Shown here piece after piece: positions 29,637-50,264 of a DNA stretch of 64,000 bases. The position numbers were made by a program, and so were the translations under genes. The notes below the pieces were generated by a model. That model was not told where the DNA came from. It searched no databases and was given only the letters and a program-made list of their open reading frames with translations. The DNA is taken from the IMG/VR virus record IMGVR_UViG_3300037297_000066, positions 124,001-188,000 of that record. One strand, written 5' to 3'. Positions within the stretch are counted from its first letter, which is position 1. Every line of letters starts with the position of its first letter.

Positions 29637-29886
<250 letters not shown>

Positions 29887-29903
<17 letters not shown>

Positions 29904-30264
29904 TCCGCTGTTGAAGGTCAGGGGTCTTGGGTTCCAGCGCTTCCTTCACAAGGGGGAACCTTTCACCCACCATCACGTGCTCCAGATTCATGAAATGGGC
30001 CCCCACGAGCTCCTGAACCCAGAGACCGGTTGCCAAGATGGGCCCCAGCAACTCAGAAGGCCATCCTGTACGGTTTACAGCCCTTGCATGCTCGTACAGC
30101 TGGCCAAAAATGGACATCTCCCATTCCTGGGACTCCTGGGAAACACGAGAAAACTGGATGGTCCAGCGGGGCCAGCTCTTCTCTCCTTGGGCGTACACAC
30201 GGTTGGCAGAACACACCTGCTCACCGGGGTCCAACACGTTCTGGTCGAGCATCACCCAGGTCAT
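29887..30264 (-). CDS. Fam-A paralog (N-domain only)
   Basis: MTWV..SWPRW..WPSELLGPIL. Confidence 0.7.
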
Positions 30265-30917: not shown

Positions 30918-30925
30918 AGGATCCT

Positions 30926-31549: not shown

Positions 31550-31862
31550 TGCGTAGCTCCGTAGGGGTTGCGAACTGAAAGTCTGTGAGAACCCATCGAC
31601 TCTTAGCCACCAGTACTAAGGACCATATTTTCTCTAGCAAAGAAGCCGGCCACTCGTAAGTATCATCCCACCCCATGGGTTCGTTAGCCTTCCACCAAAT
31701 ACGCACCACCAGAACATCCCCCAAGACCGGAACAGGGTTGCTTGAACGAGTCTGGTACAAGACTCCAACCTCCAGAAGAAAGTACGGGTAGCCTCCTTCC
31801 CACCGGTACTCCCGTCTCACGACCAGGTCGTCGTAATGCTCGTTTGACAAGACCCATGTCAT
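31536..31862 (-). CDS. Fam-A paralog (N-domain only)
   Basis: MTWV..GGYPYF..WPASLL. Confidence 0.7.
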   Translation of the reverse strand: MTWVLSNEHYDDLVVRREYRWEGGYPYFLLEVGVLYQTRSSNPVPVLGDVLVVRIWWKANEPMGWDDTYEWPASLLEKIWSLVLVAKSRWVLTDFQFATPTELRNGLG

Positions 31863-32443
31863 GACAGAGCCCGCTGCTTTCTGAGCACTCGCAGAATGGC
31901 CGCCGTGACCAGCTCCGAGGAAGTCCTCCCCGAAGGGTCTGGGAACTCTTGATACCCCATAGCTATCCCACTACGCCAACTTTGCTCATATATCGTCATG
32001 AGGTAAATCGGGTCAGACATCGAGCCCATTCGTCGAGAGGTAAGGTAGTTCTCTTCCGTCCAATCGGGGTCGGTGGGCAATACCAGCCTACTACCTGTCC
32101 CCTCCACGACCTCATAAGCTCCTAAGGGACGCCCCCTGGAGATCGCCCTTTCCACGGCCTTTTCGACCCTGTCTTGCTTAACCGAACCCTCCTTAAAAGC
32201 ACCGTCTAGGTGAGCTTTTTCAGCCTTGATGAGCAATCGGGCTAGGTCTTTCCTCAACTCAACCGGAAAAGAATCCGTCCGGTGGTAGTCCGGATCCGGA
32301 GCCTGCTTTCGGAATACCTGAACCGTCACCCGATCACCTACCTCAAAGATGCAGAAGTTGTACTCTTCGTCATCCTGACGGTAGACAAGGGAGTACCCTC
32401 GGGTTTCTTCCTGAGTCACCGAACGCACGAGCTCCCAAGGCAT
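31859..32443 (-). CDS. Fam-A paralog (N+C)
   Basis: MPW..FPVEL..FKEGSV..LGAY..DPDWTEENY..VTAAILRVL. Confidence 0.85.
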   Translation of the reverse strand: MPWELVRSVTQEETRGYSLVYRQDDEEYNFCIFEVGDRVTVQVFRKQAPDPDYHRTDSFPVELRKDLARLLIKAEKAHLDGAFKEGSVKQDRVEKAVERAISRGRPLGAYEVVEGTGSRLVLPTDPDWTEENYLTSRRMGSMSDPIYLMTIYEQSWRSGIAMGYQEFPDPSGRTSSELVTAAILRVLRKQRALS

Positions 32444-32448
32444 GAGAG

Positions 32449-32829
32449 TCAGTCCCGGTTCAGCAAGTCCGCTAACTGTTGAGCTCTGCCTAGATCATTC
32501 ACCAAGCCTCTCATGTACCTGAAGTGGCCCTGAGCAGCTTTGTTCAAGGCCGCCTTCCAGGTTCGGATGGGCTTCGAATAACGTCCTCTCCCCACTTCGG
32601 CAAGCCATGTCCTAGGACAAGCCTTCAAGCCCTTCACCAAGGAATCGTGAGACAGGACAGAAACCGCCCCAATGCTGAAGCCCCCTGGTAACCTGCCTTT
32701 GGGTCGATACCTAAGGTGCCCGTCAAACTGAGAGAACCAGAGCGTGAACCCTCTCCACTGAACCCACTCGGGATACTTTTCCCCGGTTTGCTTGACAGTG
32801 ATTTGCTTAGGCTGAGCTGGTTTCTTCAT
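32449..32829 (-). CDS. Fam-B ('WRG') paralog
   Basis: QWRGF..WLAEVG..AALNKA..H; GGAGG RBS. Confidence 0.65.
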   Translation of the reverse strand: MKKPAQPKQITVKQTGEKYPEWVQWRGFTLWFSQFDGHLRYRPKGRLPGGFSIGAVSVLSHDSLVKGLKACPRTWLAEVGRGRYSKPIRTWKAALNKAAQGHFRYMRGLVNDLGRAQQLADLLNRD

Positions 32830-32895
32830 GAGGGCCTCCACCGGAATTCGGGCACAAGACACCCTACTATACACCAATCGAGCAGGTTCTAGGGC

Positions 32896-33285
32896 CTACT
32901 CCTTTCGAGGAACCCAGTACTGGCGCACCCCCGCTATCACCAAGGTAGAGAGGATGTCTCCAAAGAACTCCAGCGGCCGTGTCCGAAATGCCTTTTGCCT
33001 AACTTCGTCTTCCTTCGCAGCTCGCCAGACTACCTCTTCTACAGTCAGCAAATGCTCATGTCTAGCATGACTCTTGTACTCAAGAATTCCCCACAACCCC
33101 TCTACAAAACAAGGAGGGACTGTCAACCCTTCCTTCATGTAGGTACCGATTTGGGATCCTCCCTCCCACAACCCAATGAGCTCGAAGAGGATGCTGTCGT
33201 AAAACTCCCCCAACGAAAGGAAACCCTCTTTGACAGAGCCTTCCCCAAACACTCCTGAAGGACAGACTATCTTTGATGCGCCCAT
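32896..33285 (-). CDS. Fam-A paralog, N-terminally truncated
   Basis: Starts at the linker GVFGEGSV..IGTY..W..Y..LLTVEE. Confidence 0.55.
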   Translation of the reverse strand: MGASKIVCPSGVFGEGSVKEGFLSLGEFYDSILFELIGLWEGGSQIGTYMKEGLTVPPCFVEGLWGILEYKSHARHEHLLTVEEVVWRAAKEDEVRQKAFRTRPLEFFGDILSTLVIAGVRQYWVPRKE

Positions 33286-33839
33286 GACGATGCCTCGTAC
33301 CTGCCTTCCTCTACGTAAGCTCGGATAACGTCGGTGATCTCTTGCTGACTGAAGTCCCATCCCCACTGGCTCCGAAACTCCCGTTCGAACTCCGAAGTAC
33401 GAAGCGGGTGGCTCTCCGCCAAATGGGCGTACTCAGAACCAATCCAATGAGGATCCGTACCAACAACCCACCCCTGGCCAGAGAGGTACGCCCCTAGTTC
33501 TTCCCCCTCATCCTGGAAGTGCTCCCTCACAGCCTTGACCAAGGCTTTCAAACGCTCGAACTCAAACACCGAAAGACTGAAGGGGCTTTCAAAGCTAGCC
33601 CTACTCACCGTTCGGCTAAGTCTCAGAATGTGTGCTGCCAACTCAACAGGCCAGGGACATAGCCGACGACTAGCAGGACTCCCCTCCTTCGTGCGAAACA
33701 CAGCGATTTCCTCACCCCCATCATTTTCCACCACTTCGATGGTGTAGGTGATAGAGAGATCATCTCCTTGAAGAGACAGATACCGAGCATTCTCCCGAAT
33801 GGAAACGGTAGGAGGGGTGTTGACTTCGACCCATCTCAC
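33267..33839 (-). CDS. Fam-A paralog (N+C)
   Basis: (M)RWVE..WPVEL..LGAY..DPHW..EY..EFR..QEITDVI; GTGA overlap. Confidence 0.85.
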   Translation of the reverse strand: MRWVEVNTPPTVSIRENARYLSLQGDDLSITYTIEVVENDGGEEIAVFRTKEGSPASRRLCPWPVELAAHILRLSRTVSRASFESPFSLSVFEFERLKALVKAVREHFQDEGEELGAYLSGQGWVVGTDPHWIGSEYAHLAESHPLRTSEFEREFRSQWGWDFSQQEITDVIRAYVEEGRYEASSWAHQR

Positions 33840-34423
33840 CGCCGCACCTCTCGTCGAATCCATTGGATGATGGTCTGCGTGATAGTGTTTTGAGAGTGCC
33901 GGCGGCCCCACATGATTCGAAGACGGATCTCGTCGGGACTTGCCAGCTGAGGGTCATCCTGAAGCATATTCAGGTAGCGATCTTCATCCCATTCATTCTC
34001 CTCTGGTCCAACAAGCTCTCCAGCAGCACGCATGTAGCCTAACTGTCTCCCGTTTTCAAACCAAGAAGCTACCAACTGTTCCAGGTCCTCTTGGGAGTTG
34101 TCCAGAGACCCCCACACCGACAACCTGTCAAAACAACCAGCTGGAACCCTGGTCTTGACGGACCCTGGAGCCACGAAAGGAAGCCCTGCCACCCTACACA
34201 CCTCGGGCAACAAGCTGAGGGGCCAAGACCCGTAGCTAATCTCTCCCGAGTCATGGTAGTTGAAGACAGCGACCTTGGGGCCTTCTTCCTTCTCAGGAGG
34301 CCGGAGAACCTCCACCACGTAGCAAGGACCCTTCCCTTCCCAAGAGAAGGTGTGCACCTCCTGAGGAGGGTTCGCTGGAAAGAAGGGCAGTCCTTCGGGG
34401 TTGGACACCTTGACCCAGGCCAT
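33836..34423 (-). CDS. Fam-A paralog (N+C)
   Basis: MAWV..WPLSLLPEV..LGY..WDEDRY..EIRLR..ITQTII. Confidence 0.85.
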   Translation of the reverse strand: MAWVKVSNPEGLPFFPANPPQEVHTFSWEGKGPCYVVEVLRPPEKEEGPKVAVFNYHDSGEISYGSWPLSLLPEVCRVAGLPFVAPGSVKTRVPAGCFDRLSVWGSLDNSQEDLEQLVASWFENGRQLGYMRAAGELVGPEENEWDEDRYLNMLQDDPQLASPDEIRLRIMWGRRHSQNTITQTIIQWIRREVRR

Positions 34424-35007
34424 TATCGGGATCCCAACCCTCGCAAGTGATTCTCTACCATCTGGGTGATCCAGACCTGTTGCTCCCCAGTTCTCGCCCC
34501 AGAAGCAAAGCGGAAAGTCTGTTCTCCTGGAGACAACTCCTCCGGAGTATGCCTCAAGACCATCAAATAGCCCTGCCAAGACCAGCTAACGCCACCAGGA
34601 ACGAAAAACGTAGGGTCATTTCCTTGGATATTCCTGAAGGAGCCGAAACGAATACCTTCCCCTACCGCTTGCATGAAGTCTACGTACAGTGACTCTCTTT
34701 CTTCTTCTTCAGGATCCTGAACAACCACCTCATCGAAAGGCCCCGGAGGGAGACCCATCTTCCCTTCTTCTCCAACCAGCTGGTGGTAACGTCCTAGAGC
34801 TTCCAAGACCGTGGGTACGATGGAAAGAGGCCAGTGCCTGAACGGTATGCGCCCAGGAAGGGAGACCGCAACCGTGACAGGTTCCTCATCCGAAGCAGGC
34901 TCTTTTACTCCGATACGAACCTCGTACTCGCAGCTCTCAGTGTCGTCTTCGCAAATCTCGAAGAGCCAATCGTCCACTTCCAACTGGTATTCCTTCAAGA
35001 TCCTCAT
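34423..35007 (-). CDS. Fam-A paralog (N+C)
   Basis: YEVRI..WPLSIVP.VLEAL..GPFDE..FGSF..W..Y..LSPGEQTFR..ITQMV. Confidence 0.85.
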   Translation of the reverse strand: MRILKEYQLEVDDWLFEICEDDTESCEYEVRIGVKEPASDEEPVTVAVSLPGRIPFRHWPLSIVPTVLEALGRYHQLVGEEGKMGLPPGPFDEVVVQDPEEEERESLYVDFMQAVGEGIRFGSFRNIQGNDPTFFVPGGVSWSWQGYLMVLRHTPEELSPGEQTFRFASGARTGEQQVWITQMVENHLRGLGSR

Positions 35008-35711
35008 ACCTGCCTCGGGTGAGTTGGGTAAGTCCCCTCCGACTCTCGGTCCCGGACCACCCGCAATACAGCATGGGTGATTTGCCTATCATTGAACCAG
35101 GGCTGACACCTACGTCGGAACTCCACATCCGAAGGAGCCAAGGTGTAGCCAGGAGCCTCGCCTTCACCAGGTGGTTGTCCAAGTGCCCAGTAGATATCCG
35201 GGTCCCAACGCCCATCCCCTGGAAGGAAAGACCGGTTCTCTGAGAAGTACCTTCCTATCCGCAATCCAAGACCCTGATCTAGGTCCTCTCTCACCCGGTT
35301 GCGCAATGCTTCAAGAGTTGGACGAGTGAGCTGCCAAAAAGGAGCCGGGTCAGAAGACTCATTGGTAGAAGCAGTCCCCCTCAAAAACCCAGGAGGACCC
35401 CACCGAACCTCGTGAGGGTCCACCACAGAGTCATCAGGAAAGTTGCTCAACTTTGCAGGTCGAACGAATATAGAAGACTGGAACCGGCTCAAAGCCTCCA
35501 TGATGAAGGGAGCCAGCTCCAAAGGTAGTGCAAACAGGATCTCCTGGGCCCCGTCCACCTTGGTCTCGTAGACCTGCAGGTGGGCCCTACGGTAAGCCTG
35601 CGTATGCCTGATGCAGATCTCGTAATACGGAGGAACCCCCTGCTCCTCTCCTACCCGAACCACAAAACAGTTGGGATCTGTATCCGTGTAATGAAGAAGC
35701 CTCAGAGGCAT
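35004..35711 (-). CDS. Fam-A paralog (N+C)
   Basis: YYEI..PLELAPFIMEAL..IGRY..PGDGRWDPDIY..EFR..ITHAVLRVV. Confidence 0.85.
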   Translation of the reverse strand: MPLRLLHYTDTDPNCFVVRVGEEQGVPPYYEICIRHTQAYRRAHLQVYETKVDGAQEILFALPLELAPFIMEALSRFQSSIFVRPAKLSNFPDDSVVDPHEVRWGPPGFLRGTASTNESSDPAPFWQLTRPTLEALRNRVREDLDQGLGLRIGRYFSENRSFLPGDGRWDPDIYWALGQPPGEGEAPGYTLAPSDVEFRRRCQPWFNDRQITHAVLRVVRDRESEGTYPTHPRQV

Positions 35712-35819
35712 ACCAACACAACTATACACCAGTCACTAGACCCCCCACTTAATCGAGCCGTCCTCAAAGACTCCCACCGGACGAATGACCGAATCCTTTG
35801 CGAGCCTTTCGTAGGCCAT

Positions 35820-36398
35820 CTACCGAAACCCCCTCTGGAACCTTCTCAAACCCTCTGTGATGGCATCGGTAATCTCCCCCCAAACGAACCCGGCTCCCTC
35901 TTGCTCTGTGCGGAAAGCGTACTCGGCGCTACACAAAGATCCTCTGGTGAAGCGCGCTCTTCCCACATAGTTCTCCACTTCCCACTCTGTGTTTTGCGGT
36001 GTGATCAATCGGCGGGCCGGTGGTTCAACAGACAAATCAACGTAGTAGGATCCTAAAGGGACTCCTCGCTCAAGCTCCCGAAACACCCGATCCACCAAGC
36101 CTGCAAAAGGATTTTGCTCCTCCATCCAATCCTTGACGGAACCCTCTCGAAAGGGACTCTCTATCGTTTCTTGCTTGCACAAAGCCAGAGCTTTCAAGAT
36201 GGCAGGTAGAAGCTCTAAGGGCACCCCCGCAGGATCTAGATAAGCCCTTTCGGATTCCTGTTCTTCGTAAACCTTGTAGCGACCGGCCTCTTTCGTGACT
36301 AGCACAAGAAACCGAGGGAACTTCTGATTTTCCTTCTGCAACCTGAACCCGAAGACTCGGTCAGAAGTCTCGTAAGGAATAGTCTGCCACTCAGCCAT
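35820..36398 (-). CDS. Fam-A paralog (N+C)
   Basis: PLELLPAILKAL..PFREGSV..LGSYY..WEVENY..AEYAFR..EITDAI. Confidence 0.85.
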   Translation of the reverse strand: MAEWQTIPYETSDRVFGFRLQKENQKFPRFLVLVTKEAGRYKVYEEQESERAYLDPAGVPLELLPAILKALALCKQETIESPFREGSVKDWMEEQNPFAGLVDRVFRELERGVPLGSYYVDLSVEPPARRLITPQNTEWEVENYVGRARFTRGSLCSAEYAFRTEQEGAGFVWGEITDAITEGLRRFQRGFR

Positions 36399-36996
36399 TA
36401 CGCCATTCCTGAACGGCTCGTTCTGCCGCCTGCCTGTTGACCCAGGCTCGGCCTCGAATGCGAGCCTCTTCAAGGTCTCTCAGGACAGTCTGAATGGCCT
36501 GCGTGATCTCGTACCTTCCAAAATAGTCGGCCTCTGCCGAACGAAAAGAGCGCTCTTCTAAGCTCAATCTGGCAGGAGTCAAGGTGGCCTGAACGTACTC
36601 CTCAGATCGCCACCGGGAGTCCAACACCCCGATCATGGTTCGAAGATCCAAGTCATAGTAGCTACCGAGATCTCCTCCCATTCGAAGACTACCCCGAATA
36701 CGATCCAACAGGTCTTCTTCTGGGTTCCCCTCCATAGGGTCCCAGACACTGTCTTTGTCAAAGACGCTCCTGTATTGCGGACGGTGATCCAGCAGTGCCT
36801 TGCCTTTCATGACAAAGGGCAGTAGGTCCGTAGGTAAGTATTGGAAGGTTTGCCAGAACTGGTCAGCTGACGTCCGATAAGAAGCTCTGACGTCCCCCTC
36901 AATGAAGGCAATCTGGTAACAAGGGAAACGGTCCTTCCCTTCCGCTACCTCCACAATGAACTCGGGAGACCTGTCCAGAACTTCAACGATCTTCAC
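36391..36996 (-). CDS. Fam-A paralog (N+C)
   Basis: PTDLLPFV..VFDKDSV..LGSYY..DSRW..EEY..EERSFR..EITQAI. Confidence 0.85.
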   Translation of the reverse strand: MKIVEVLDRSPEFIVEVAEGKDRFPCYQIAFIEGDVRASYRTSADQFWQTFQYLPTDLLPFVMKGKALLDHRPQYRSVFDKDSVWDPMEGNPEEDLLDRIRGSLRMGGDLGSYYDLDLRTMIGVLDSRWRSEEYVQATLTPARLSLEERSFRSAEADYFGRYEITQAIQTVLRDLEEARIRGRAWVNRQAAERAVQEWRNG

Positions 36997-37496
36997 AGAA
37001 CCTCCTCAGCACGATGATGCCTATCTGCCACAGCCTGAGTCAGCAGCTCTCGCTGGTCTCCGCTCAAGGTGTCTCGAAGGACAGCCTCCTCCAACCTGAT
37101 GAAAGGACGTCCATGAAAGAGCGCCTGTCGATACCCCGCTAGGTTCCAGTTAGCATCTGTGGGCCCTCGCCATCCACTGTCGCTGTCCCGATACTCCCCC
37201 ACCCTTCCCTCTTGCAGCATCTGGTAGATCTCAGAAGCTATGCGTGAAGCATCAGGAGCCGTCACAGAGCCTTCCTCGAAGTTCGTAGGAATGACGCATG
37301 CGTCGGACCGCAAACTCACCCCTTCCAGGATCAAAGGGAGAAGATCCCTGGAAAAAGCAGCTTTCAACGAATCGTTGGGAAACCTACGAATTTCAACACA
37401 ATCATCGAAAACGTAGAGATTGCAGACGGGGCGCCCTCTTTTTTCCACGAGCACCCGCACGCAATCAGCCAGTTTCTCTGTCTTCCGGATCCGCAT
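36993..37496 (-). CDS. Fam-A paralog (N+C)
   Basis: LLPLILE..FEEGSV..VGEY..PTDANW..GY..LTQAV. Confidence 0.85.
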   Translation of the reverse strand: MRIRKTEKLADCVRVLVEKRGRPVCNLYVFDDCVEIRRFPNDSLKAAFSRDLLPLILEGVSLRSDACVIPTNFEEGSVTAPDASRIASEIYQMLQEGRVGEYRDSDSGWRGPTDANWNLAGYRQALFHGRPFIRLEEAVLRDTLSGDQRELLTQAVADRHHRAEEVL

Positions 37497-37500
37497 GGTT

Positions 37501-37728
37501 CTAGTGCAGATTGGGGTTCTTCAAAGAGCCCTGCTTGGGGTGGCATTGACTACCCCCAGGTAGCAACTCCTGATCTGGCCATTCGCTGATCACAGCGACA
37601 GGATCGTTACAGTGGTTGCAGATGACCACTAACTCCTGGTTCTCGTTGATGCCAAGCGAGAAGTTGCTCTTCTCACACGTCTTGCAACTCACGAAAAGGT
37701 GAGGAGCTTTGATTATTTTCACTGACAC
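37501..37728 (-). CDS. small Zn-ribbon protein
   Basis: CKTC...CNHC. Confidence 0.55.
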   Translation of the reverse strand: MSVKIIKAPHLFVSCKTCEKSNFSLGINENQELVVICNHCNDPVAVISEWPDQELLPGGSQCHPKQGSLKNPNLH

Positions 37729-37970
37729 GTAGCACCTTCTTTGGCTAGCTTTCTACCCATGCAGTAGTCTGCCTCTGAGGCACACGGCTGCAAGACCTTG
37801 AATGGGAAGGGCCTCCCTGTGGCTCGTGCGTAGATCTTAACGCAATCGGAACACCAGGAATCGGGATAGAAGACAGGTTCCCCTACCCACCGACCCCCTT
37901 CCCCTAAGCCTTGAACACCACAGAAGGTAGTGCCTTGAGGACTCGTCAACAGATGGTAGATCTGACTCAT
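37719..37970 (-). CDS. small Cys-containing protein
   Basis: H..T.CG...CSDC; TAATG coupling. Confidence 0.55.
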   Translation of the reverse strand: MSQIYHLLTSPQGTTFCGVQGLGEGGRWVGEPVFYPDSWCSDCVKIYARATGRPFPFKVLQPCASEADYCMGRKLAKEGATCQ

Positions 37971-38284
37971 TACACATCTCTACCCTGTATCAACCAGTCT
38001 GTCACCTTTCGAGCCTTGGCTACGCTCTCTTCAAGCTCCTGAAGACGTTCCAAGTGACGTTCCAAAGCGAAGTCCAGAGCTACCAAAGGGCTCTCAAAAG
38101 AAGGGCTACTTCCGTACCCGACCCTAGCCGTCCACTCTAGGGGTCTGGCGAGACCATGGATTGTAGAGATGACGTAGATACGAAACTCGGGATGGTTGTC
38201 CTGCTTATCCCAACAATAGGTCCAGTCCCCTTGATGGAGGAACTTGCACCCTCGCCACTCCAAGGTGTCAGGGACAGACGGCAT
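37970..38284 (-). CDS. Fam-B ('WRG') paralog
   Basis: LEWRG..WTARVG..P..ALDFALERHLER; ATG 6 nt after GGTGTATGGT. Confidence 0.75.
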   Translation of the reverse strand: MPSVPDTLEWRGCKFLHQGDWTYCWDKQDNHPEFRIYVISTIHGLARPLEWTARVGYGSSPSFESPLVALDFALERHLERLQELEESVAKARKVTDWLIQGRDV

Positions 38285-38311
38285 GACCTCACCATACACC
38301 GACCCGAGAGC

Positions 38312-39073
38312 CTAAGGGGATCTCAACCTAGCCCTAGCCAGATGAAAGATCTCCGGCCCCATGTAATTGGGCTCGATACCCCCATCAGCCCAGATGGCTT
38401 GCAAGGTAGCGGCTACGTCGATGATGGCATGGGTGAGAGATCGATCCAGAAGAGGGTTCGTGGCACACTCCAAACGATGCCGCAGCACACGCTCACTCTG
38501 GGACAAGGTGGAGTAGTCTTCTGAAACTCGGGTTTGTTGTTCATACCGGTCGGCATCCCAGTACTGGTTGTTCATGAGCAGGTACTGACCATCCTGGTAG
38601 TAGCTACCTAGCTCGTAACGCCCTCGATTTTCCATGAAGTCTAGAACCACATCCATTATCGACTGGTTCTCCTGAATGGGTTCGGGCTCCCCTTCTCTTA
38701 CGTCCGAAAAGGGCGTGGAAAGGTCCTCCAAGAAAACCTTCTGAATGCCTGACTCTGGACACGTCAGAGGTGTCTCCAGCTTTAGACTAGCCTTCTGCAA
38801 GGTAGCCAGCAGTGGCCCCTGCAAGTTGAAGGGCCAAAAGTCTGACTCTACATACGTCTGCTCTACCCTATCCCAGTGGTGTATCATCACAACACACGGG
38901 TCATCCATTCCTGGTAGGGCCCGTCCATAGAGTTTGACTTCAATCCTGCAACGAGAGCCAGGCCCGAGCCAAAGGTACTCTCGAAAGAAGACACGGACCT
39001 TGACGGGTTCGTCAGCGTCCCAGTCTTCGAACCGGGTTATAAGGCCCTCGGCTATAACCGTCCAATCCATCAC
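38312..39073 (-). CDS. Fam-A paralog (N+C)
   Basis: MMDW..WPFNL..LGSYY..WDADRY..LSQSERVLR..LTHAI. Confidence 0.85.
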   Translation of the reverse strand: MMDWTVIAEGLITRFEDWDADEPVKVRVFFREYLWLGPGSRCRIEVKLYGRALPGMDDPCVVMIHHWDRVEQTYVESDFWPFNLQGPLLATLQKASLKLETPLTCPESGIQKVFLEDLSTPFSDVREGEPEPIQENQSIMDVVLDFMENRGRYELGSYYQDGQYLLMNNQYWDADRYEQQTRVSEDYSTLSQSERVLRHRLECATNPLLDRSLTHAIIDVAATLQAIWADGGIEPNYMGPEIFHLARARLRSP

Positions 39074-39609
39074 GCCTCCCCCGGAGGATTACTGTAACCT
39101 CCATAGGCATGGTACCGGGCCACCATCTCAGTGACATCTTCTACAGACACTCCCAAGGCCGCAAGGAGTGACCGCAAAGGCACTTCAGAGCTCCTGAGAT
39201 ACACCTCTGTTGGTTGAGGGATCAAGCTTGTAGCGACTACACGCCGATAGACCTCGACCTCCCATTCGGCGTTCTGAGCAGGAACAATCCAAAGATCCCC
39301 TACGGGCCTGTAGGCACCCAGGCCGCCCGAGCGGATCAAGTCGGTAACGATGGTTTCCAGGTTGTCGTATTGGAGGTACGTACCAGGCGTGACTGAAACC
39401 TCTTCAAAGACTGACTCGACACAAACTTTCGAGTCCGCCTCAGCCAAGACCTTACGCAACTCAGCAAGCCACCCTTTAGGACCTGGCTGCTTTCCGAAGC
39501 TAGCCTGAAGAAGCTGAGAGATTTGATAGGCCGTCTCAGTATGCCCAGCGACCACATAGTGAAGCATATCGGACAACAAGTCCAAGGTACCCTTCCGATT
39601 GAGAGTCAT
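39070..39609 (-). CDS. Fam-A C-domain with alternative helical N-domain
   Basis: N-terminus LLSDMLHYV..G like 42628..43116; VESVFEEVSV..LGAY..WEVEVY..VTEMV. Confidence 0.8.
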   Translation of the reverse strand: MTLNRKGTLDLLSDMLHYVVAGHTETAYQISQLLQASFGKQPGPKGWLAELRKVLAEADSKVCVESVFEEVSVTPGTYLQYDNLETIVTDLIRSGGLGAYRPVGDLWIVPAQNAEWEVEVYRRVVATSLIPQPTEVYLRSSEVPLRSLLAALGVSVEDVTEMVARYHAYGGYSNPPGEA

Positions 39610-40133
39610 CTAGGGCCCCTCCTGATCGATGCCACGTGAATGATAGCCTGGGTGATCTCTTCCTGGGTGTAGTTCTCTCCCCAACACTCTCGGAAAGTCT
39701 TTTCCTGCTCACTGAGCTCTTGCAGGTCGTTCGCAAAGTAGATCTCAGGATCCCACCCAGCCACGCTCGTGTTGTAGATGACCCCTGCTGCCACATAGTC
39801 CCCAAAAGCAGCCCCGTTATGCATGGCCGCTTGCACAACACGCTCCAAAGGACTCAGTTTGACAGGGCATGCAACGGTGCTTTCACCGAACACGCTGTTG
39901 ACCCGAAGCTTGCCCGTCTTCGGCTGCTGACCCCAGATGACGTAAGCCAGAACGTCATTGGGTACGTTGTAAAGCGTCTCAAACGACCACTCTCCCCCTT
40001 CCTCGTCTTGGACCCAAACCACGACATCTCTAGTGGTGTTCTGCCTCTGAAACCTGTAACGAGGCCATCCCCCATCCTGGGAAACCAGTCGGCCAGGAAG
40101 AGGGTTGTCGTCAGAAAGGTCGATCCAAACCAT
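39606..40133 (-). CDS. Fam-A paralog (N+C)
   Basis: MVW..QDGGWPRY..VFGESTV..FGDY..WDPEIY..EKTFR..EEITQAI; ATG 6 nt after GGTGTACTAT. Confidence 0.85.
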   Translation of the reverse strand: MVWIDLSDDNPLPGRLVSQDGGWPRYRFQRQNTTRDVVVWVQDEEGGEWSFETLYNVPNDVLAYVIWGQQPKTGKLRVNSVFGESTVACPVKLSPLERVVQAAMHNGAAFGDYVAAGVIYNTSVAGWDPEIYFANDLQELSEQEKTFRECWGENYTQEEITQAIIHVASIRRGPR

Positions 40134-40153
40134 CGACGAATAGTACACCATGG

Positions 40154-40645
40154 CTAGCTCAGGGTCAGACTGTAGAGCCCCCGTGGACTCTTCGGATCGT
40201 AGAAAGAGGAGCCTTGAGGGAGCACCTGGGGGTCCCATTGTCGGATCGGATACCCCAGATCGAACAAGGGCCCTTGAATCGACCCAGTAGCCTGAAGCAT
40301 CAAAGCTAACCTCTGAAGGCCCTTCAACCGGCCAGATGACCTGAACCAGGAAACCAGCCGATCATGCTCCCGAGCTAGCATCCTTCGGTAATCGGCCAGC
40401 GAAGAGCCGTCAGGGGGCACTGAAGACCGTTTTGGAGAGGGTCCGCTCCCCAGCCTCGCTGCTTCCAAAGCCGCATCAGGAGCCACCCTCGTGGCAACCT
40501 TGACGGCATAGCTGGGACGGTAGACCCCCGAGACTTTGACTCCCGTGATCTCGACCGAATCGACTATGAAGCCCGTTGCCAGGGCCACCATTGCCAGGCC
40601 CGCCAACTCAGTCGCACAAGTAGCCGCCATCCGATCGCTCATCAC
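40154..40645 (-). CDS. hypothetical protein
   Basis: Coupled ORF, not clearly Fam-A. Confidence 0.55.
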   Translation of the reverse strand: MMSDRMAATCATELAGLAMVALATGFIVDSVEITGVKVSGVYRPSYAVKVATRVAPDAALEAARLGSGPSPKRSSVPPDGSSLADYRRMLAREHDRLVSWFRSSGRLKGLQRLALMLQATGSIQGPLFDLGYPIRQWDPQVLPQGSSFYDPKSPRGLYSLTLS

Positions 40646-41214
40646 ATCCTTACCCTAATCCTTACCCTAAACTCTAGCACCAGCCCGCTAACAATATCCT
40701 GATCGATCCCCATCTGGTTGGCTAGAAGACGTAGACGCCACTCAGCCTCTTCGAGTCCGCCAGCGTCGGTTTCGGTCATCCTTTGTACAGCGGCCAGGTA
40801 GTCCTCTTCACGCCACAGGCCCTGGTTAACTCGAATGAAAGATCCTCTCACTTGATAGGACCCTATACAAGTCTCAAAGGCCAACAGATGACCTGCCAAC
40901 ATGAGAAAAGCTTCTAAGGGATCCTGCCCTCCGCTCACAGCCTCTTCTTTGAAAGGAGACGAGTGGTCGAGGGTGTGTGCACCGATCAACAAGGAAAAGC
41001 GAGCCAGGGCCTCCCACAACTGCCGGGGAACGAAAGGTGCCTCAAACCAAGTAGCTCCCTCCCTCTCTTGACTCTGAAACTGAAACCTCACGAAATCAGG
41101 GTCTTGTGCGACAGGAGACACCCAAGCTTGGTAGCGAGGCCAGCCCCCGTCCTCGGCCAAAGTCACCACCGTTTCTCGTTCGGTGTGTTTGGTGTTGATG
41201 ACCACGTAGCTCAC
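40642..41214 (-). CDS. Fam-A paralog (N+C)
   Basis: EDGGWPRY..PFKEEAV..IGSY..WREEDY..AEWRLR; GTGA overlap. Confidence 0.85.
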   Translation of the reverse strand: MSYVVINTKHTERETVVTLAEDGGWPRYQAWVSPVAQDPDFVRFQFQSQEREGATWFEAPFVPRQLWEALARFSLLIGAHTLDHSSPFKEEAVSGGQDPLEAFLMLAGHLLAFETCIGSYQVRGSFIRVNQGLWREEDYLAAVQRMTETDAGGLEEAEWRLRLLANQMGIDQDIVSGLVLEFRVRIRVRM

Positions 41215-41774
41215 ACATCCCCCAAAATTTCTGCCACACGACGAGTAAGACTCTCGTTGGTCTCCCCGAAGTAGCGTCTCAGAACCCGTCGCAGATGAAT
41301 CTCTGACTGACGCAAGAAGAGATTCTCCCGCACGGCCCACTCGTACTCTGACAGAACCCATTCCTCAGTACGTGGATAAATCAAGTACTCCCCTTGACGC
41401 CTCTGGTAGGTTCCCATCTCCCTGTCGTTGATAGCCTGCTCCACTATTTCATGAACCCCAGGAAGGGCTGACTCTTGAACAGAACCCTCGCCAAAGGTCC
41501 CAGAGAAGTCTCGACTTCCGGACACCATCCGGGCTAGATCCAAGATTTCTGGAAGCAGGCTCAAAGGCCATGAGGTGGGTTCCAACCATTCAGCGTCTTC
41601 TCTCCACGCTCTAACCTGGAGCGTTATCATAGCCCATGCAAGAGGAGGCACGATGGCTTCGACAACTAAAGGAGTAGTAACCTCTGCACCATTCTCTATC
41701 AGCACCACCCGACGCCAGTAAACGGTGCATCGTCCCCGAGGACGTTCGCCGGTCTCTTGGACTACCCAGGGCAT
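41211..41774 (-). CDS. Fam-A paralog (N+C)
   Basis: MPWV..WPLSLLPEIL..TFGEGSV..MGTY..EY..SEIHLR..LT. Confidence 0.85.
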   Translation of the reverse strand: MPWVVQETGERPRGRCTVYWRRVVLIENGAEVTTPLVVEAIVPPLAWAMITLQVRAWREDAEWLEPTSWPLSLLPEILDLARMVSGSRDFSGTFGEGSVQESALPGVHEIVEQAINDREMGTYQRRQGEYLIYPRTEEWVLSEYEWAVRENLFLRQSEIHLRRVLRRYFGETNESLTRRVAEILGDV

Positions 41775-42067
41775 GCGTCTCTCACACCCAAGAGCTGGGA
41801 AAAGGTAGTCAGCCGCCTGGACAAGTCCGTGTGTTCCCGCACCCTCTTCACGTGGTTCTGAAGCGCCGCTTCCAAAGCCACCTGAGGGTCCTCATGCATA
41901 GCGGCCCCGAGTCCCACTATCCCCTTGAACATCTCGCAGTAGGACAGATCCATGACTCGAACTCGCAAGTCCCCTTCGACCAACCCTTCGTAGACCCCGT
42001 ACTCGATGGGGTGTCTTTTCAAGACGAAGCCTCGCCACTTGATGGATCCTTTGGATTTCTCTTCCAT
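41762..42067 (-). CDS. Fam-B ('WRG') paralog
   Basis: IKWRGFVL..IVG..EDPQVALEAALQNHVKR; ATG 5 nt after GGTGTATGGT. Confidence 0.75.
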   Translation of the reverse strand: MEEKSKGSIKWRGFVLKRHPIEYGVYEGLVEGDLRVRVMDLSYCEMFKGIVGLGAAMHEDPQVALEAALQNHVKRVREHTDLSRRLTTFSQLLGVRDACPG

Positions 42068-42094
42068 GACCTACCATACACCGTCAGGAGTCTC

Positions 42095-42631
42095 TCACTC
42101 GTCAGCTTCCAGGCCATAACGCCTTCGAACGTAGGAGATGACCTCTTCTGTCAGTGTCTCCTCTGAAACCTCGATGAGCTGGCACACTTGTCGAAAGCCT
42201 TGCTCTACAGACGACACCCTGCCTGCTGAAACAGCTAGACGATACCCTTCCTCCGTCCACCCTCTCAGGTCCGGAACAGCTTGATAATCAAGATCAGGGT
42301 CAAAGTACTGCCCTAGAATATGGGCTTCCACGAGCCCCCCGACAGACTCCTGAAAGGTCGTTTCAGAAGTCTGTTCGACAGCACCAAAGGAACTCTCTGG
42401 AACCTTTTTGCAGAAACTTCGGAGCCCCAGGATCACTGGAATCAGCTTCTCGGGCCACCGGTACTCAAGGTGTTTCAGGGCCGTTGGGAAGGCTTGCTTG
42501 GCCACCGTAAACGCCTGGTCGCCCCACCAACGCACCTCGTACTGAGGCCACTTGTCAGGGGCCTCACCCACCCACCAGGTCAGAGTGCTGGTAGGGGGGT
42601 CATGGATGGGGCCCCGGAGAACTCTCATCAC
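42095..42631 (-). CDS. Fam-A paralog (N+C)
   Basis: WPQYEV..WPEKLIPVIL..LGQY..WTEEGY..EQGFR..LTEEVI. Confidence 0.85.
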   Translation of the reverse strand: MMRVLRGPIHDPPTSTLTWWVGEAPDKWPQYEVRWWGDQAFTVAKQAFPTALKHLEYRWPEKLIPVILGLRSFCKKVPESSFGAVEQTSETTFQESVGGLVEAHILGQYFDPDLDYQAVPDLRGWTEEGYRLAVSAGRVSSVEQGFRQVCQLIEVSEETLTEEVISYVRRRYGLEADE

Positions 42632-43116
42632 TCTCCTTGAGGGACGGTTGCAGCCACCCTGTCTATCACAAGCTGGGTGAGAAGCGTCTGAACTCGATCA
42701 GAAAACAAGGCTCTCAACTCAGCTTCCCCACTCGTGATACTAGGTACTCCCCTTGCTACAGCGGTTCGGTAATCAATCTCGTTCCAGGAGGTGTGTCCAG
42801 GGGAGATCCACAACGCAAAAGCAGAGTTCCAGTAGTGCCCCATCCACGACCATTGAGCTGCTGAGCCCATCAAGGCCCCTGCCGAAAAACCCTCTTCCCA
42901 GACCGACGCCTCAGTGAAGACTGACTGGACCTGGACTGTTGGATGGTCCTCGAACATGGCCCGTTCTATGTGATCTACCCACTTTCTGTACGAAAACGCT
43001 CCACACACCAAGAGATCCAGGGCGTTAGAGTATCTTTGGGCAAACTCAATGTTTCCCTGCGACACATGACGCAAGAGCCCCTCTAAACAGTCCCGTACAA
43101 GCTCCCGACGCATCAC
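42628..43116 (-). CDS. Fam-A C-domain with alternative helical N-domain
   Basis: CLEGLLRHVSQG..; VQSVFTEASV..MGHY..WNEIDY..EAELR..LTQLVI. Confidence 0.8.
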   Translation of the reverse strand: MMRRELVRDCLEGLLRHVSQGNIEFAQRYSNALDLLVCGAFSYRKWVDHIERAMFEDHPTVQVQSVFTEASVWEEGFSAGALMGSAAQWSWMGHYWNSAFALWISPGHTSWNEIDYRTAVARGVPSITSGEAELRALFSDRVQTLLTQLVIDRVAATVPQGE

Positions 43117-43682
43117 GGTCCTACTTGGGTGTCAACGTACTGAGCGTAATGAGCAATCTCGTTCGTGATGTCCTCTGCTGTGAGTCCGAACTGCACGAAG
43201 GTGTTCCGTAGAGACCTCTCAAGCCGACTTATCCGGCTCCCTGGATCAAGGTCCAAGATCCTCCGATACTCTTCCACGTTCCATTCCTCGGAGCCTACGT
43301 AGACCCAGTGATCGAGTATGTAGTAGTGGCCAATGACCCCTTGTCTGGCAGCCTCCCGAATCAAGAACAGTAACGGATGGGCAGCAGAGGCTATATCCAC
43401 TGACTCTCGGTTCCCGAAAACCTCTGAAAAATCCGTACCTGGGCTGGCCTCCTGCAACATGGACAGGATCTCAGGAAGCAACCCCATTGACCACTTCTCA
43501 GCCGTCACCCATTCTCTAGAGCTCCCTTGATACTCCTTGACTCGAAGCTTGGGAGGCATAGCGGGTTCTCTTACCACTTCTAGAAGGTAAGATCCCTCCC
43601 GATTCGAAGAGGCCATCTCTCGCCAGTGCACCTGAGCACTGCCTTCGGCATAGGACCCCTGCTTGGCCACTTGCCAGGTCAT
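43113..43682 (-). CDS. Fam-A paralog (N+C)
   Basis: MTW..LLPEIL..VFGNRESV..IGHY..WNVEEY..ERSLR..DITNEI. Confidence 0.85.
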   Translation of the reverse strand: MTWQVAKQGSYAEGSAQVHWREMASSNREGSYLLEVVREPAMPPKLRVKEYQGSSREWVTAEKWSMGLLPEILSMLQEASPGTDFSEVFGNRESVDIASAAHPLLFLIREAARQGVIGHYYILDHWVYVGSEEWNVEEYRRILDLDPGSRISRLERSLRNTFVQFGLTAEDITNEIAHYAQYVDTQVGP

Positions 43683-43686
43683 ACGA

Positions 43687-44040
43687 TCAATGCCTGTCCG
43701 CACACAAGCAGCACTTGCTAGGGTGCTCTTGCTCGTCTTCTAGAGTCAGCGATCCACATTCGGGGCACTCGGAAATGCCCAAAATCTGCTGAGCAAACTG
43801 CTCAAACTCCCGAGCTTTGGTCAGGTGGCTTCGCACCCTTTCCAAGTGTGCCTTCAGAGCCTGTTCCAAGGCTTCTAAAGGATTTTCTTGGTATCCGTAA
43901 GCAACCCCCACATGAGCCCACCACTTAGGATCGTTCTCGTACTGGCGAAGACCCGCTTCCAGGGAAGAGGTAATCTGGGCTCTATACCCGTCCTCGGTCT
44001 TCTCCAAGACTACACCACGCCATACGAACTGACTTTCCAT
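43687..44040 (-). CDS. Fam-B ('WRG') paralog with C-terminal Zn ribbon
   Basis: FVWRGVVL..WWAHVG..ENPLEALEQALKAHLER..CPEC; ATG 6 nt after GGTGTACGGT. Confidence 0.75.
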   Translation of the reverse strand: MESQFVWRGVVLEKTEDGYRAQITSSLEAGLRQYENDPKWWAHVGVAYGYQENPLEALEQALKAHLERVRSHLTKAREFEQFAQQILGISECPECGSLTLEDEQEHPSKCCLCADRH

Positions 44041-44100
44041 ACACTCACCGTACACCAAGGGTGGGCTCCCATAGCACACCTGTTTACAGGAAAAAGCCAA

Positions 44101-44406
44101 CTCAGAACTGATAATTACAAGCCACCTAAACTAGCTCAAAACAAGGTGATCCACGCCAGCTTGTAGACACTTAAACCGTCACACTACAGGCACTGGTCAA
44201 ACATGAGGACAAAAACACCTTAAGTGCTCGAAACCATTGAGGCCAGATTCAAGGGGCTTTATACAACCTTCTAAGGCGCACCACCTAGCCTTGATAAGGC
44301 AACGCTAAGGCAAACTGCCTTTACAAGAGCCCGTCCGAGTTGTGAGCTTCAGTAGCGTAATCCAGGATGAGTTCCGTAACCCATTCCTCTCCCACTACAC
44401 ACCGAG
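44101..44406. other. lower-GC non-coding island with TTGTAGAC motif
   Basis: No ORF of 60 aa or more across most of it; GCTTGTAGACAC at 44159. Confidence 0.6.
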
Positions 44407-44634
44407 CTACAGAGACTTCAGAAGGATCATGACTCGCTCGACCAGGTCTTGAGGCTCCGCTTCCAGATCATGCGAGTCCAAAGTTACCGGGATAGACCCT
44501 TCCTTCCTGGCCAGGTGAAGGACAAGCCCCGGGCCTTTGGGGGCTAGAACCAAGCAATGGCTCCTGCCGAAGGGAGGGGGAACCTTCTTGGTGAGCTGCA
44601 GCAGTATCTCCTGGACTTGCTGAAGAGGGGCCAT
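44407..44634 (-). CDS. hypothetical protein
   Basis: Start re-called to MAPLQQ..., 5 nt after TAGACT. Confidence 0.6.
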   Translation of the reverse strand: MAPLQQVQEILLQLTKKVPPPFGRSHCLVLAPKGPGLVLHLARKEGSIPVTLDSHDLEAEPQDLVERVMILLKSL

Positions 44635-44964
44635 GGTCCAGTCTATCACAAGCCGGTAGAAGAGGAGTGTGCCTGCTGCCGCCACTCTTGTCGAAAAAGA
44701 AGACTGGCATAAAACAAGGGGTCTGAGGCCAGCTTGTAGACACATTTAGCCAGGTCGGAGACACTTTACACGGTGACACCTGAGCAGTAGACCTTTTGCT
44801 CCAACCCCTCGTAATTGTACAACCCAAGAACCTCTTCGTAGTGTCACCACTACTTAGGGGGTACAGCAGGGTCTACAACCTAGCCGAAGTTCACTATCCT
44901 TTTCACTGTCTCTTCAGTCTCTGCGGTCTTAAGGCAGAGACATGCCGCCAACGGTTCAAGACCT

Positions 44965-45546
44965 TCACCAAGACACCTCTTCCCGAAGAAGGCTCACAAC
45001 CTTCAAGATCTCAGCTGTGAGCTGCTCCGGATAAGGGGGCTCCTCCCAACTTCTTCTGACAATATCCTCTGTATCCAGAAGGAACAAAGAAGCTGAGTCC
45101 CCACGAAGGGCGCTCAAGTAGTGAGCAGGGTTCCAGTCTGGGTCTGTGACCTCAACTAGTCTGCCTCCAACCATGTAGCGGCCCACAGTCCTTGCTCGTA
45201 CAGCCTCTTCAACTCGCTTCCTAAAGTCTGACTCCGAGAGTTCAGAAAAAGGCACCACAGAGTCAGAAGCAGAGGACCCTTCGAACAACCCTTCAGGTAC
45301 TGCCAAGGCATCCTTCCTCATCACAGAAAGAGCTTGGAGCAAAAAGGCTATCACACTCCCAGGAAAGTACTCCGAGGTTACTGGCTGAACCCCATCTTCC
45401 CGGATCGTGATTCTCCACCTAAGCCCATGGTCCTCCTGCTCAGGATCGGAAGAGACGCTGATCCAGTAGACAGGCGAATCGTCCTCATCCTCGTGCACCA
45501 AGAGAGCGTAGCTATCCTCGGATCTTACGGGACCCAGGACTTTCAC
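44965..45546 (-). CDS. Fam-A paralog (N+C)
   Basis: SPVY.I..FP..FLLQAL..LFEG..VGRY..DPDWNP.HY..LTAEILKV. Confidence 0.85.
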   Translation of the reverse strand: MKVLGPVRSEDSYALLVHEDEDDSPVYWISVSSDPEQEDHGLRWRITIREDGVQPVTSEYFPGSVIAFLLQALSVMRKDALAVPEGLFEGSSASDSVVPFSELSESDFRKRVEEAVRARTVGRYMVGGRLVEVTDPDWNPAHYLSALRGDSASLFLLDTEDIVRRSWEEPPYPEQLTAEILKVVSLLREEVSW

Positions 45547-50257: not shown

Positions 50258-50264
50258 GGAAGTC

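What the first reader, a model, noticed from the sequence alone, without database searches (positions are those of the whole stretch)
32449..44056. Four 'WRG' genes (Fam-B) each sit first behind a promoter and punctuate the Fam-A array
Seen: 32449..32829, 37970..38284, 41762..42067 and 43687..44040 share WRG...(W)xAxVG...PxxALxxALxxHxxR. Each lies directly behind a GGTGTAnnGT motif (32866, 38291, 42073, 44047) and upstream of a run of Fam-A genes; the 37970 gene has two small Cys proteins in between. Inference: the duplicated unit may be promoter + Fam-B + Fam-A block, with Fam-B as partner, chaperone or regulator of Fam-A.
Basis: partly seen in the sequence, partly recalled or inferred. Interest (0 to 1): 0.6.

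Follow-up and report, generated by a model that had tools for sequence, protein, structure and literature searches.

The report
Small lead genes in megaphage paralog array
In a 437-kb wetland megaphage, a small orphan protein family ("WRG", Fam-B) usually sits as the first gene behind a short promoter-like motif, at the head of runs of a ~50-copy orphan family (Fam-A); the layout is real and conserved in a distant relative, but the function is still unknown.

Summary
The four ORFs are one family: each is recognised by an HMM built without it (E 1e-8 to 1e-15). A fifth copy lies outside the window and away from Fam-A. All four window copies sit directly behind GGTGTAnnGT, which occurs 105 times in the genome against about 8 expected.

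The window is part of a 437,331-bp virus record with terminal repeats. Fam-A has about 50 very divergent two-domain paralogs filling about 43 kb.

The motif looks like a TG-extended -10 element without a -35. It lies 5-7 nt before the start codon, the geometry of leaderless mRNAs. It is not specific to Fam-B: 11 of 50 Fam-A genes also have it. Still, 8 of 11 Fam-B genes against 14 of 75 Fam-A genes lie directly behind it (p = 6e-4).

A 27-kb contig of a distant relative carries the same arrangement: a Fam-A array, six Fam-B genes and the same motif. The B4 and B1 subtypes have orthologs there, so the blocks are old, not recent duplicates.

Neither family matches any Pfam, PHROG, NCBIfam or PDB entry, or any known fold. 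A partner or regulator role for Fam-B is plausible but unproven. The complex prediction gave no verdict, and no RNA data exist.

The parts
43687..44040 (-). Fam-B copy B4 (117 aa). WRG domain plus a C-terminal CxxC-x14-CxxC zinc-ribbon-like tail. Its stop overlaps or abuts the next Fam-A gene.
   Evidence: Ortholog with the same Cys4 tail in the relative: L017:4688-5074, 37% identity, E 4e-21.
44047..44056 (-). Class-1 promoter-like motif GGTGTACGGT, 6 nt before the B4 ATG.
41762..42067 (-). Fam-B copy B3 (101 aa). It overlaps the downstream Fam-A gene (41211-41774) by 13 nt.
   Evidence: AF2 model pLDDT 85.
42073..42082 (-). Class-1 motif GGTGTATGGT, 5 nt before the B3 ATG.
37970..38284 (-). 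Fam-B copy B2 (104 aa), followed by two small Cys proteins and then Fam-A genes.
   Evidence: dN/dS 0.27 against strain L004.
38291..38300 (-). Class-1 motif GGTGTATGGT, 6 nt before the B2 ATG. Identical in strain L004.
32449..32829 (-). Fam-B copy B1 (126 aa, pI 10.7), the most divergent copy. Probably led by a Shine-Dalgarno site (GGAGG 5 nt before the ATG) on a 36-nt leader. An alternative GTG start lies at 32862.
   Evidence: Ortholog group in the relative: L017:14376-14735, E 2.5e-13. dN/dS 0.35.
32866..32875 (-). Class-1 motif GGTGTATAGT upstream of B1. Identical in strain L004.
37501..37970 (-). Two small Cys proteins (83 aa and 75 aa) between B2 and the Fam-A run. The 75-aa protein has CxxC-x18-CxxC.
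   Evidence: weak zinc-finger hits; conserved; dN/dS 0 to 0.26
28458..64000 (-). Fam-A tandem array: about 50 paralogs of about 200 aa with an N-terminal beta+helix domain, a FxEGSV linker and a C-terminal helical domain. It runs on to genome 194829, beyond the window. It includes stand-alone ORFs with only the N or only the C domain.
35721..35730 (-). Class-1 motif directly before a Fam-A gene (35004-35711) with no Fam-B. It shows the motif is not specific to Fam-B.
42628..43116 (-). Fam-A gene that is absent in a related strain from marine sediment (a contig joins 42577 to 43135).
   Evidence: The relative's gene table shows two, not three, Fam-A genes between B4 and B3.

Best explanation
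The window lies in a complete 437-kb megaphage with direct terminal repeats, found in wetland and sediment metagenomes. About 10% of the genome is a tandem array of about 50 very divergent, acidic, two-domain orphan proteins (Fam-A).

The four WRG genes belong to a second orphan family (Fam-B). Its predicted fold is six beta strands plus one long helix.

Fam-B genes are typically the lead cistron of transcription units. These units begin at a short promoter, YGGTGTAYRGTRGGG: a TG-extended -10-like TAnnnT hexamer with a G-rich discriminator and no conserved -35. The hexamer sits so close to the start codon, 11-13 nt from its first T, that the mRNA should start at or next to the AUG/GUG. That makes the mRNA leaderless. 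B1 is the exception, with a 36-nt leader and a GGAGG.

The Fam-A genes behind each Fam-B are read from the same transcript, with overlapping or abutting stop and start codons. The head position, and the pairing with Fam-A, have been kept since before two phage lineages split.

I therefore take Fam-B to be a co-expressed accessory component of the Fam-A module. Most likely it is a small protein-binding adaptor or assembly factor made first and in step with the Fam-A proteins that follow. The whole array is probably a diversifying accessory arsenal for host takeover or counter-defence.

Shown: the families, the gene order, the motif enrichment and geometry, conservation in relatives, purifying selection, and copy-number change between strains.

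Inferred: promoter activity, leaderless transcripts, use of a sigma-70-type host polymerase, any physical Fam-B/Fam-A contact, and the arsenal role.
For: - Genome identity.
- Fam-B: five copies in the genome; each confirmed by leave-one-out HMM.
- Fam-A: 50 copies; median pI 5.0 against 6.8 genome-wide.
- Structure models: Fam-B pLDDT 85; Fam-A pLDDT 90.
- Motif: 105 observed against about 8 expected. 64 of 105 sites have an ORF start 3-8 nt downstream. Starts are ATG or GTG in 82 of the 85 sites that have an ORF start within 40 nt.
- Motif logo: Y at -1, RGGG after the motif, no -35 conservation.
- All sites lie between 37 and 315 kb of the genome. Many are back-to-back divergent pairs.
- TANNNT about 12 bp before the start codon is the published signature of leaderless genes (PMC3160421).
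- A second class of 36 sites has TTAAGA, a 17-nt spacer and TG-TAGTAR at the same distance from the ATG. This points to a sigma-70-type polymerase.
- No phage RNA polymerase was found.
- Head position: 8 of 11 Fam-B against 14 of 75 Fam-A directly behind the motif.
- Conserved association: the relative's contig carries about 25 Fam-A, 6 Fam-B and 12 motifs. Orthology of B4 with r4688 and of B1 with r14376.
- Coupling: gene overlaps of 13-17 nt.
- Real genes: all intact in strain L004, dN/dS 0.15-0.6, motifs identical.
- Plasticity: loss of 42628-43116 in another strain.
Against: - No transcript data exist; all 12 runs that hold the sequence are DNA. Promoter and leaderless status are therefore inferred.
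- The G-rich stretch after the motif could instead act as a short-spaced ribosome-binding site.
- The fifth Fam-B copy is not next to any Fam-A.
- About three quarters of the Fam-A genes are in units without Fam-B, a ratio of about 5 to 50.
- B2 is followed first by two Cys proteins rather than by Fam-A.
- The complex prediction for B3 with its downstream Fam-A scored 0.00. This is no verdict, not evidence against binding.
- No fold or family match supports any specific biochemical role.
Confidence: 0.45

Rival explanations
1. Fam-B is functionally independent of Fam-A. Both are merely residents of the same hyperplastic accessory region. Small genes with their own promoter (moron-like cassettes) get inserted between Fam-A runs, so Fam-B looks first simply because it arrived with a promoter.
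For: - The fifth Fam-B copy, and a probable sixth distant one (genome 210062-210394, E 0.007), lie outside the array among unrelated small genes.
- The motif precedes many unrelated small ORFs genome-wide.
- Most Fam-A units lack Fam-B.
- The complex prediction gave no support.
Against: - Interleaving of the two families is conserved in a relative at about 30-37% protein identity. The subtype order is also kept: the B4 type comes before the B1 type, which comes before DUF5662.
- Stop and start codons overlap with the following Fam-A gene.
Confidence: 0.28
2. Fam-B is a small nucleic-acid-binding autoregulator that controls its own transcription unit. It would be made first from a leaderless message, as many phage repressors and antitoxins are.
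For: - First-cistron position.
- The zinc-ribbon-like Cys4 tail of the B4 subtype is conserved across lineages.
- Cys4 mini-proteins follow B2 and B5.
- B1 has pI 10.7.
- Weak structural resemblance to RNA- and ribosome-binding alpha/beta folds: HPF/YfiA TM 0.54-0.63; Rv1738 Z 5.7 with rmsd 1.2 over 57 residues; dsRBD Z about 4.
Against: - No helix-turn-helix, ribbon-helix-helix or other DNA-binding fold was found.
- Four of the five copies are acidic or neutral (pI 4.9-7.8).
- All fold matches are below the noise level the tool states (Z under 8).
- No operator-like repeats were noticed around the motifs, though this was not searched systematically.
Confidence: 0.17
3. The motif is a translation signal (an unusual ribosome-binding site or enhancer) rather than a promoter. 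On this reading Fam-B is not at the head of a transcription unit at all.
For: - Fixed spacing of 5-7 nt to start codons, and a G-rich run (RGGG) between the motif and the start.
- Some sites lie inside the 3' end of an upstream ORF.
Against: - Only about 1 gene in 6 has the motif, and none do in the 0-37 kb and 315-437 kb regions of long genes.
- Palindromic back-to-back pairs serve divergent genes.
- The core matches TG + TAnnnT at the distance published for leaderless promoters.
- A sister class carries a proper -35-like box at 17 nt.
- Internal array genes use overlaps or ordinary GGAG-type sites instead.
Confidence: 0.1

Closest known systems
Leaderless-gene promoters of Actinobacteria and Deinococcus-Thermus (TANNNT about 12 bp before the start codon; PMC3160421, PMC4007540)
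   Same: The TAnnnT hexamer lies 11-13 nt before ATG or GTG. No Shine-Dalgarno site is needed. The signal is strongly over-represented upstream of starts.
   Different: Here the hexamer sits inside a much longer invariant phage-specific word (GGTGTA..GT plus RGGG). It is confined to one part of a phage genome and often forms palindromic divergent pairs. No transcription start data exist.
Hyperplastic accessory regions of large phages, such as the T4 early-gene clusters and the variable internal-protein (IP) loci (from my own knowledge)
   Same: Dense runs of small, fast-evolving genes of unknown function with their own promoters. Gene content varies between strains.
   Different: T4 has nothing like a 50-copy single family. 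No sequence or fold relationship was found.
Paralogous virion and inner-body protein families of phiKZ-like jumbo phages (from my own knowledge)
   Same: Multi-copy divergent paralog families in a jumbo phage. The conserved FxE-GSV linker in Fam-A recalls the x-x-Glu sites cut by prohead proteases.
   Different: No homology. The copy number is far higher. No virion proteomics exist. The promoter class here is absent from the presumed structural-gene regions.
Tandem immunity-protein arrays of polymorphic toxin systems, such as the SUKH families (from my own knowledge)
   Same: Tandem arrays of about 150-250-aa divergent paralogs with alpha+beta folds.
   Different: No Pfam SUKH or Imm hit in any of 32 members at E up to 1. 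No such structure appears among the top fold matches. There is no toxin gene, and the context is a phage.
CesT-type secretion chaperones and HPF/YfiA ribosome hibernation factors (nearest shapes to Fam-B)
   Same: A small alpha/beta protein with a beta sheet packed on a helix. Atlas TM by query is 0.59 for CesT and 0.54-0.63 for HPF. HPF-like chains score Z 4.3-4.7.
   Different: No sequence match. The topology is six strands then one helix, not that of either family. All scores are in the range the tools call common chance resemblance.

Membership tests
Any curated protein family (Pfam-A, PHROGs, NCBIfam, PDB sequences) | Profile HMM match above the curated or significance threshold, for Fam-B and Fam-A | tested here: not met
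   Pfam: no hit with E below 0.01. PHROGs: best E 0.12. NCBIfam: nothing relevant. PDB profile search: best E 0.06-0.08.
Sigma-70-type leaderless promoter | TAnnnT hexamer about 10-13 nt before the start codon, over-represented against shuffles | tested here: met
   105 sites against about 8 expected. The modal gap is 5-7 nt from the hexamer end to ATG or GTG. This matches the criterion in PMC3160421.
Sigma-70-type leaderless promoter | Transcript 5' end at or next to the start codon | not testable with these tools
   Only DNA runs hold the sequence; there is no RNA run.
Canonical sigma-70 promoter (-35 TTGACA, 16-18 nt spacer, -10 TATAAT) | Both hexamers present upstream of the Fam-B genes | tested here: not met
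   The consensus scan found 0 sites in 29500-48500, against 7.9 expected. There is no information content at -35 in the class-1 logo. A separate class of 36 sites does carry TTAAGA at 17 nt, but not at the Fam-B genes.
CesT / class I secretion chaperone | PF05932 match and the CesT fold | tested here: not met
   No Pfam hit. Only TM 0.59 to a predicted CesT cluster. No CesT chain has convincing scores in the PDB searches.
HPF/YfiA (Ribosomal_S30AE) | PF02482 match and the beta-alpha-beta-beta-beta-alpha fold | tested here: not met
   No Pfam hit. Fam-B is predicted as six strands then one helix. Z is 4.3-4.7, below the tool's chance level.
Polo-box domain (for the Fam-A N-terminal domain) | Six-stranded sheet plus helix superposing with significant Z | tested here: inconclusive
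   Best Z is 6.1, rmsd 3.0, 71 residues (ZYG-1 cryptic polo box). The tool states that Z under 8 is common by chance.
SUKH / polymorphic-toxin immunity arrays | SUKH or Imm family HMM match, plus an adjacent toxin gene | tested here: not met
   No such Pfam family in 32 members at E up to 1. No toxin-like gene was seen in the array.

The most novel reading that the evidence does not exclude
Fam-A and Fam-B together form a previously undescribed two-component system of megaphages. It would be a combinatorial library of about 50 diversified two-domain proteins (effectors, decoys or packaged proteins) served by a handful of conserved lead-cistron subunits. These subunits, Fam-B subtypes B1 to B5, would load, target or regulate the Fam-A proteins. 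The whole system would be expressed from leaderless transcription units.
Probability: 0.15. Interest if true: 0.8.

Novelty: new variant of a known kind. Interest (0 to 1): 0.5.

Why it matters
One tenth of a 437-kb phage genome is spent on a single orphan family. A second orphan family is held at the head of its transcription units in two lineages. That degree of investment and conservation implies an important function, probably in phage-host conflict, that no current database describes.

The promoter words found here also give a ready map of transcription units for this phage group. There are 105 class-1 sites and 36 class-2 sites, both with leaderless geometry. They suggest that a megaphage relies heavily on leaderless translation. 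This is testable and says something about its unknown host.

Tried and rejected
- Complex prediction of B3 with its downstream Fam-A (41211-41774): score 0.00, reported by the tool as no verdict. I do not use it as evidence either way.
- Profile comparison of Fam-B with Fam-A (hhalign): no relationship, probability 0.2%. I therefore dropped the idea that Fam-B is a free-standing Fam-A N-domain, although both are a beta meander followed by a helix.
- Fold searches gave nothing above the tools' chance levels. These were Foldseek against PDB and BFVD, VIA-align wide, and the ESM Atlas by features and by shape.
- A single-protein scan of IMG/VR with B3 found nothing.
- tblastn of B4 against 50,697 GenBank phages found nothing.
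- A relative found through DNA polymerase (43% identity; 110-kb contig, 23% complete) has neither family. This is uninformative.
- The word-index search with the Fam-A profile was swamped by candidates. It was replaced by the exhaustive search.
- The Fam-A tree, meant to test block-wise duplication, is star-like with only one well-supported branch. It cannot decide. The Fam-A genes after B3 and B4 are each other's best match at only 25% identity.
- A general link between Fam-B and zinc ribbons holds only for the B4 subtype across lineages. The relative's other Fam-B genes have no Cys4 neighbour.
- Intrinsic terminators are not enriched in the array: 14 against 18.6 expected.
- The adenylosuccinate-synthase-like gene is not PurZ: 34 bits against a cut-off of 300.

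Full report
**What the window is.** The window is bases 124001-188000 of a 437,331-bp virus record with direct terminal repeats, estimated complete. It is a megaphage.

- Other genes in the window include an RNB + dsRBD RNase, a divergent adenylosuccinate synthase homolog, a protein kinase and an AAA ATPase.
- The genome also encodes family A DNA polymerase, class II ribonucleotide reductase and NAD-dependent ligase.
- Public runs that hold the sequence are wetland and marine-sediment metagenomes. All are DNA.

**The observation.** The four ORFs are real. They lie on the minus strand at the stated coordinates.

- They align over W-R-G, V/I-G and P..AL..A...H.
- An iterative HMM over all 2,683 ORFs of 50 aa or more in the genome recovers exactly five members. 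These are the four in the window and one at genome 213407-213787 on the plus strand.
- Leave-one-out profiles find each copy at E 7.6e-9 to 4.5e-15. B1 is the most divergent.
- With an improved profile, a probable sixth, distant member appears at genome 210062-210394 (E 0.007).
- In a strain 94% identical at the DNA level (L004), every gene of the region is intact, with dN/dS 0.15-0.6. B1 has 0.35 and B2 has 0.27. These are therefore real protein-coding genes under purifying selection.

**Fam-A.** The Fam-A genes are a huge family.

- There are 50 HMM-significant paralogs, all on the minus strand. They fill genome 152.4-194.8 kb, about 43 kb or 10% of the genome. Weaker fragments extend the array further.
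- Paralogs share only about 20% identity. The maximum-likelihood tree is a star with median terminal branches of 1.37 substitutions per site.
- The AlphaFold model (pLDDT 90) has two domains. The N-terminal domain has four strands plus a helix. A low-confidence linker follows, carrying the conserved F-x-E-G-S-V word. The C-terminal domain is helical.
- Stand-alone ORFs with only the N or only the C domain occur in this phage and in relatives.
- The proteins are acidic, with median pI 5.0 against 6.8 genome-wide.
- One copy (42628-43116) is missing in a sediment strain. Copy number is therefore still changing.

**The motif.** GGTGTAnnGT occurs 105 times on both strands, against 4-11 in Markov-2 simulations.

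- The logo is Y-GGTGTA-Y-R-GT-R-G-G-G, with no information at -35.
- In 64 of 105 sites an ORF of 40 codons or more starts 3-8 nt after the motif, with a mode at 5-7. Of the 85 sites with such an ORF start within 40 nt, 82 start with ATG or GTG.
- All sites lie between 37 and 315 kb. The flanking regions with long genes have none. Many sites form palindromic back-to-back pairs in front of divergent genes.
- Read as TG + TAYRGT, the hexamer's first T is 11-13 nt from the start codon. This is the published signature of leaderless genes, whose -10 box doubles as the only upstream signal (PMC3160421; see also PMC4007540, listed).
- A second word, GGGTTAAGATC, occurs 36 times and 0 times in the reversed control. 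It aligns as TTAAGA, a 17-nt spacer and TG-TAGTAR, again just before an ATG. That is a full sigma-70-like promoter class with the same leaderless geometry.
- No phage RNA polymerase was detected. There is only a sub-threshold sigma region 2 hit.
- I therefore read the motif as a promoter, probably for a sigma-70-type host enzyme. There are no RNA data, so this is inference.
- A ribosome-binding reading is less likely. The reasons are the restricted distribution, the divergent pairs, and the ordinary GGAG-type sites or stop/start overlaps seen at internal genes.

**Fam-B and the motif.** All four window copies are directly behind the motif.

- The fifth copy is the second gene of a unit that starts at a motif.
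- The motif is not specific to Fam-B: 11 of 50 Fam-A genes have one too.
- B1 differs from the others. Its ATG is 36 nt from the motif and has a GGAGG 5 nt upstream, so it is probably leadered.

**Relatives.** The word-index search finds only strain variants of the five genes.

- The exhaustive profile search with Fam-A finds 81 cluster representatives among 1.84 billion. About 50 are this phage or its strains. About 30 are under 45% identical to any copy here.
- Short contigs carrying the distant copies again show tandem Fam-A genes and the same motif.
- One 27-kb contig (Ga0255983_100471; L017 and L019) is decisive. It holds about 25 Fam-A genes, six Fam-B genes and twelve motif sites. Four of the six Fam-B genes lie directly behind a motif. 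The array ends at a DUF5662 gene, as here.
- B4 and the relative's gene at 4688-5074 are reciprocal best hits (37%, E 4e-21). They share the CxxC-x14-CxxC tail.
- B1 groups with the relative's pair at 14021 and 14376.
- Over both lineages, 8 of 11 Fam-B against 14 of 75 Fam-A genes are directly behind the motif (Fisher p = 6e-4).
- The association and the head position are therefore conserved. The Fam-B subtypes are older than the split of the lineages. This argues against recent duplication of promoter + Fam-B + Fam-A blocks.

**What the proteins are.** Nothing known matches either family.

- There is no Pfam, PHROG, NCBIfam or PDB-sequence match.
- Fam-B (pLDDT 85) is predicted as six strands and a long helix. 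Its nearest shapes are levivirus coat N-terminal sheets, Rv1738, HPF/YfiA, dsRBDs and CesT-type chaperones. All are at Z 5.7 or less, or TM about 0.6, which the tools call chance-level.
- The Fam-A N-domain is nearest to polo boxes (Z 6.1). Its C-domain is nearest to small winged-helix-like domains (Z 5.7 or less). Again this is not significant.
- Fam-B and Fam-A are unrelated by profile comparison.

**Mechanism.** The best-supported picture is as follows.

- Fam-B is the lead cistron of leaderless transcription units (SD-led for B1). The Fam-A genes in those units follow with overlapping or abutting stops and starts.
- The pairing is conserved, so I favour a co-expressed accessory role for Fam-B towards Fam-A, as an adaptor or assembly factor. 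The array would serve as a diversifying accessory arsenal.
- This is weakly held. One or two Fam-B genes live without Fam-A, most Fam-A units lack Fam-B, and the single complex prediction returned no verdict.
- The rivals remain open: independent residents of one plastic region, a leader-encoded autoregulator, or the motif as a translation signal.

**Verdict.** The families are new, but the kind of feature, a lineage-specific multigene array in a giant phage with its own promoter word, is a variant of something known. Interest is moderate.

Noticed in passing
window 15495, 16463, 18657, 19716 (-); 50226, 52193, 52879 (+); 59783, 60190 (-); 36 sites genome-wide: A second over-represented word, GGGTTAAGATC, occurs 36 times and 0 times in the reversed control. 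It aligns as a -35-like TTAAGA, a 17-nt spacer, a TG-extended TAGTAR and an ATG a few nt later. It looks like a second, full sigma-70-like promoter class with leaderless geometry.
   Followed up: partly
genome 240615/240620, 242779/242784, 246316/246321, 253796/253802; window 6797/6805: Palindromic back-to-back pairs of the class-1 motif (ACCATACACC-N4-5-GGTGTATGGT) lie in front of divergent genes whose start codons are only about 40 nt apart.
   Followed up: partly
window 9730-11391 (+) and 11384-12265 (+): A 553-aa adenylosuccinate synthase homolog scores below every NCBIfam cut-off (PurA 152 bits; PurZ only 34 bits, so it is not PurZ). It overlaps a protein-kinase-domain gene.
   Followed up: partly
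window 3444-5180 (+): A phage-encoded RNase II/R-type RNB domain is fused to a C-terminal double-stranded-RNA-binding motif.
   Followed up: no
window 42577-43135: A related strain in a marine-sediment metagenome lacks this 557-bp stretch, which is one Fam-A gene. The same strain has an 11-nt insertion at 44294.
   Followed up: partly
window 31536-31862, 54694-55074, 32896-33366; L017:1227-1553, 5505-5897: Fam-A domains also occur as stand-alone ORFs. N-domain-only genes end just after the FxEGSV word. C-domain-only genes begin after it. The linker is therefore a natural module boundary.
   Followed up: partly
L002:5759-6364 (-) and L002:13436-14143 (-) (genome 210759-211364 and 218436-219143): Another pair of paralogs of about 200-235 aa (a 'Fam-C', starting MGASLEVV/AVVFRSP...) lies next to the distant Fam-B-like gene at genome 210062-210394.
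   Followed up: no
L002:8860-9036 (+) (genome 213860-214036): A 58-aa Cys-rich ORF (CC...CxxC) lies just after the fifth Fam-B copy. It is driven by a hybrid promoter carrying both the class-2 and the class-1 word.
   Followed up: no
genome 271850-271966 (+), outside the window: A 392-aa ORF has a weak, sub-threshold Sigma70 region 2 match (E 0.0017). It may be a phage sigma factor.
   Followed up: no
window 27546-28046 (-): A DUF5662-family gene marks the downstream end of the Fam-A array, both here (by synteny with L004) and in the distant relative (L019:16125-16595).
   Followed up: partly
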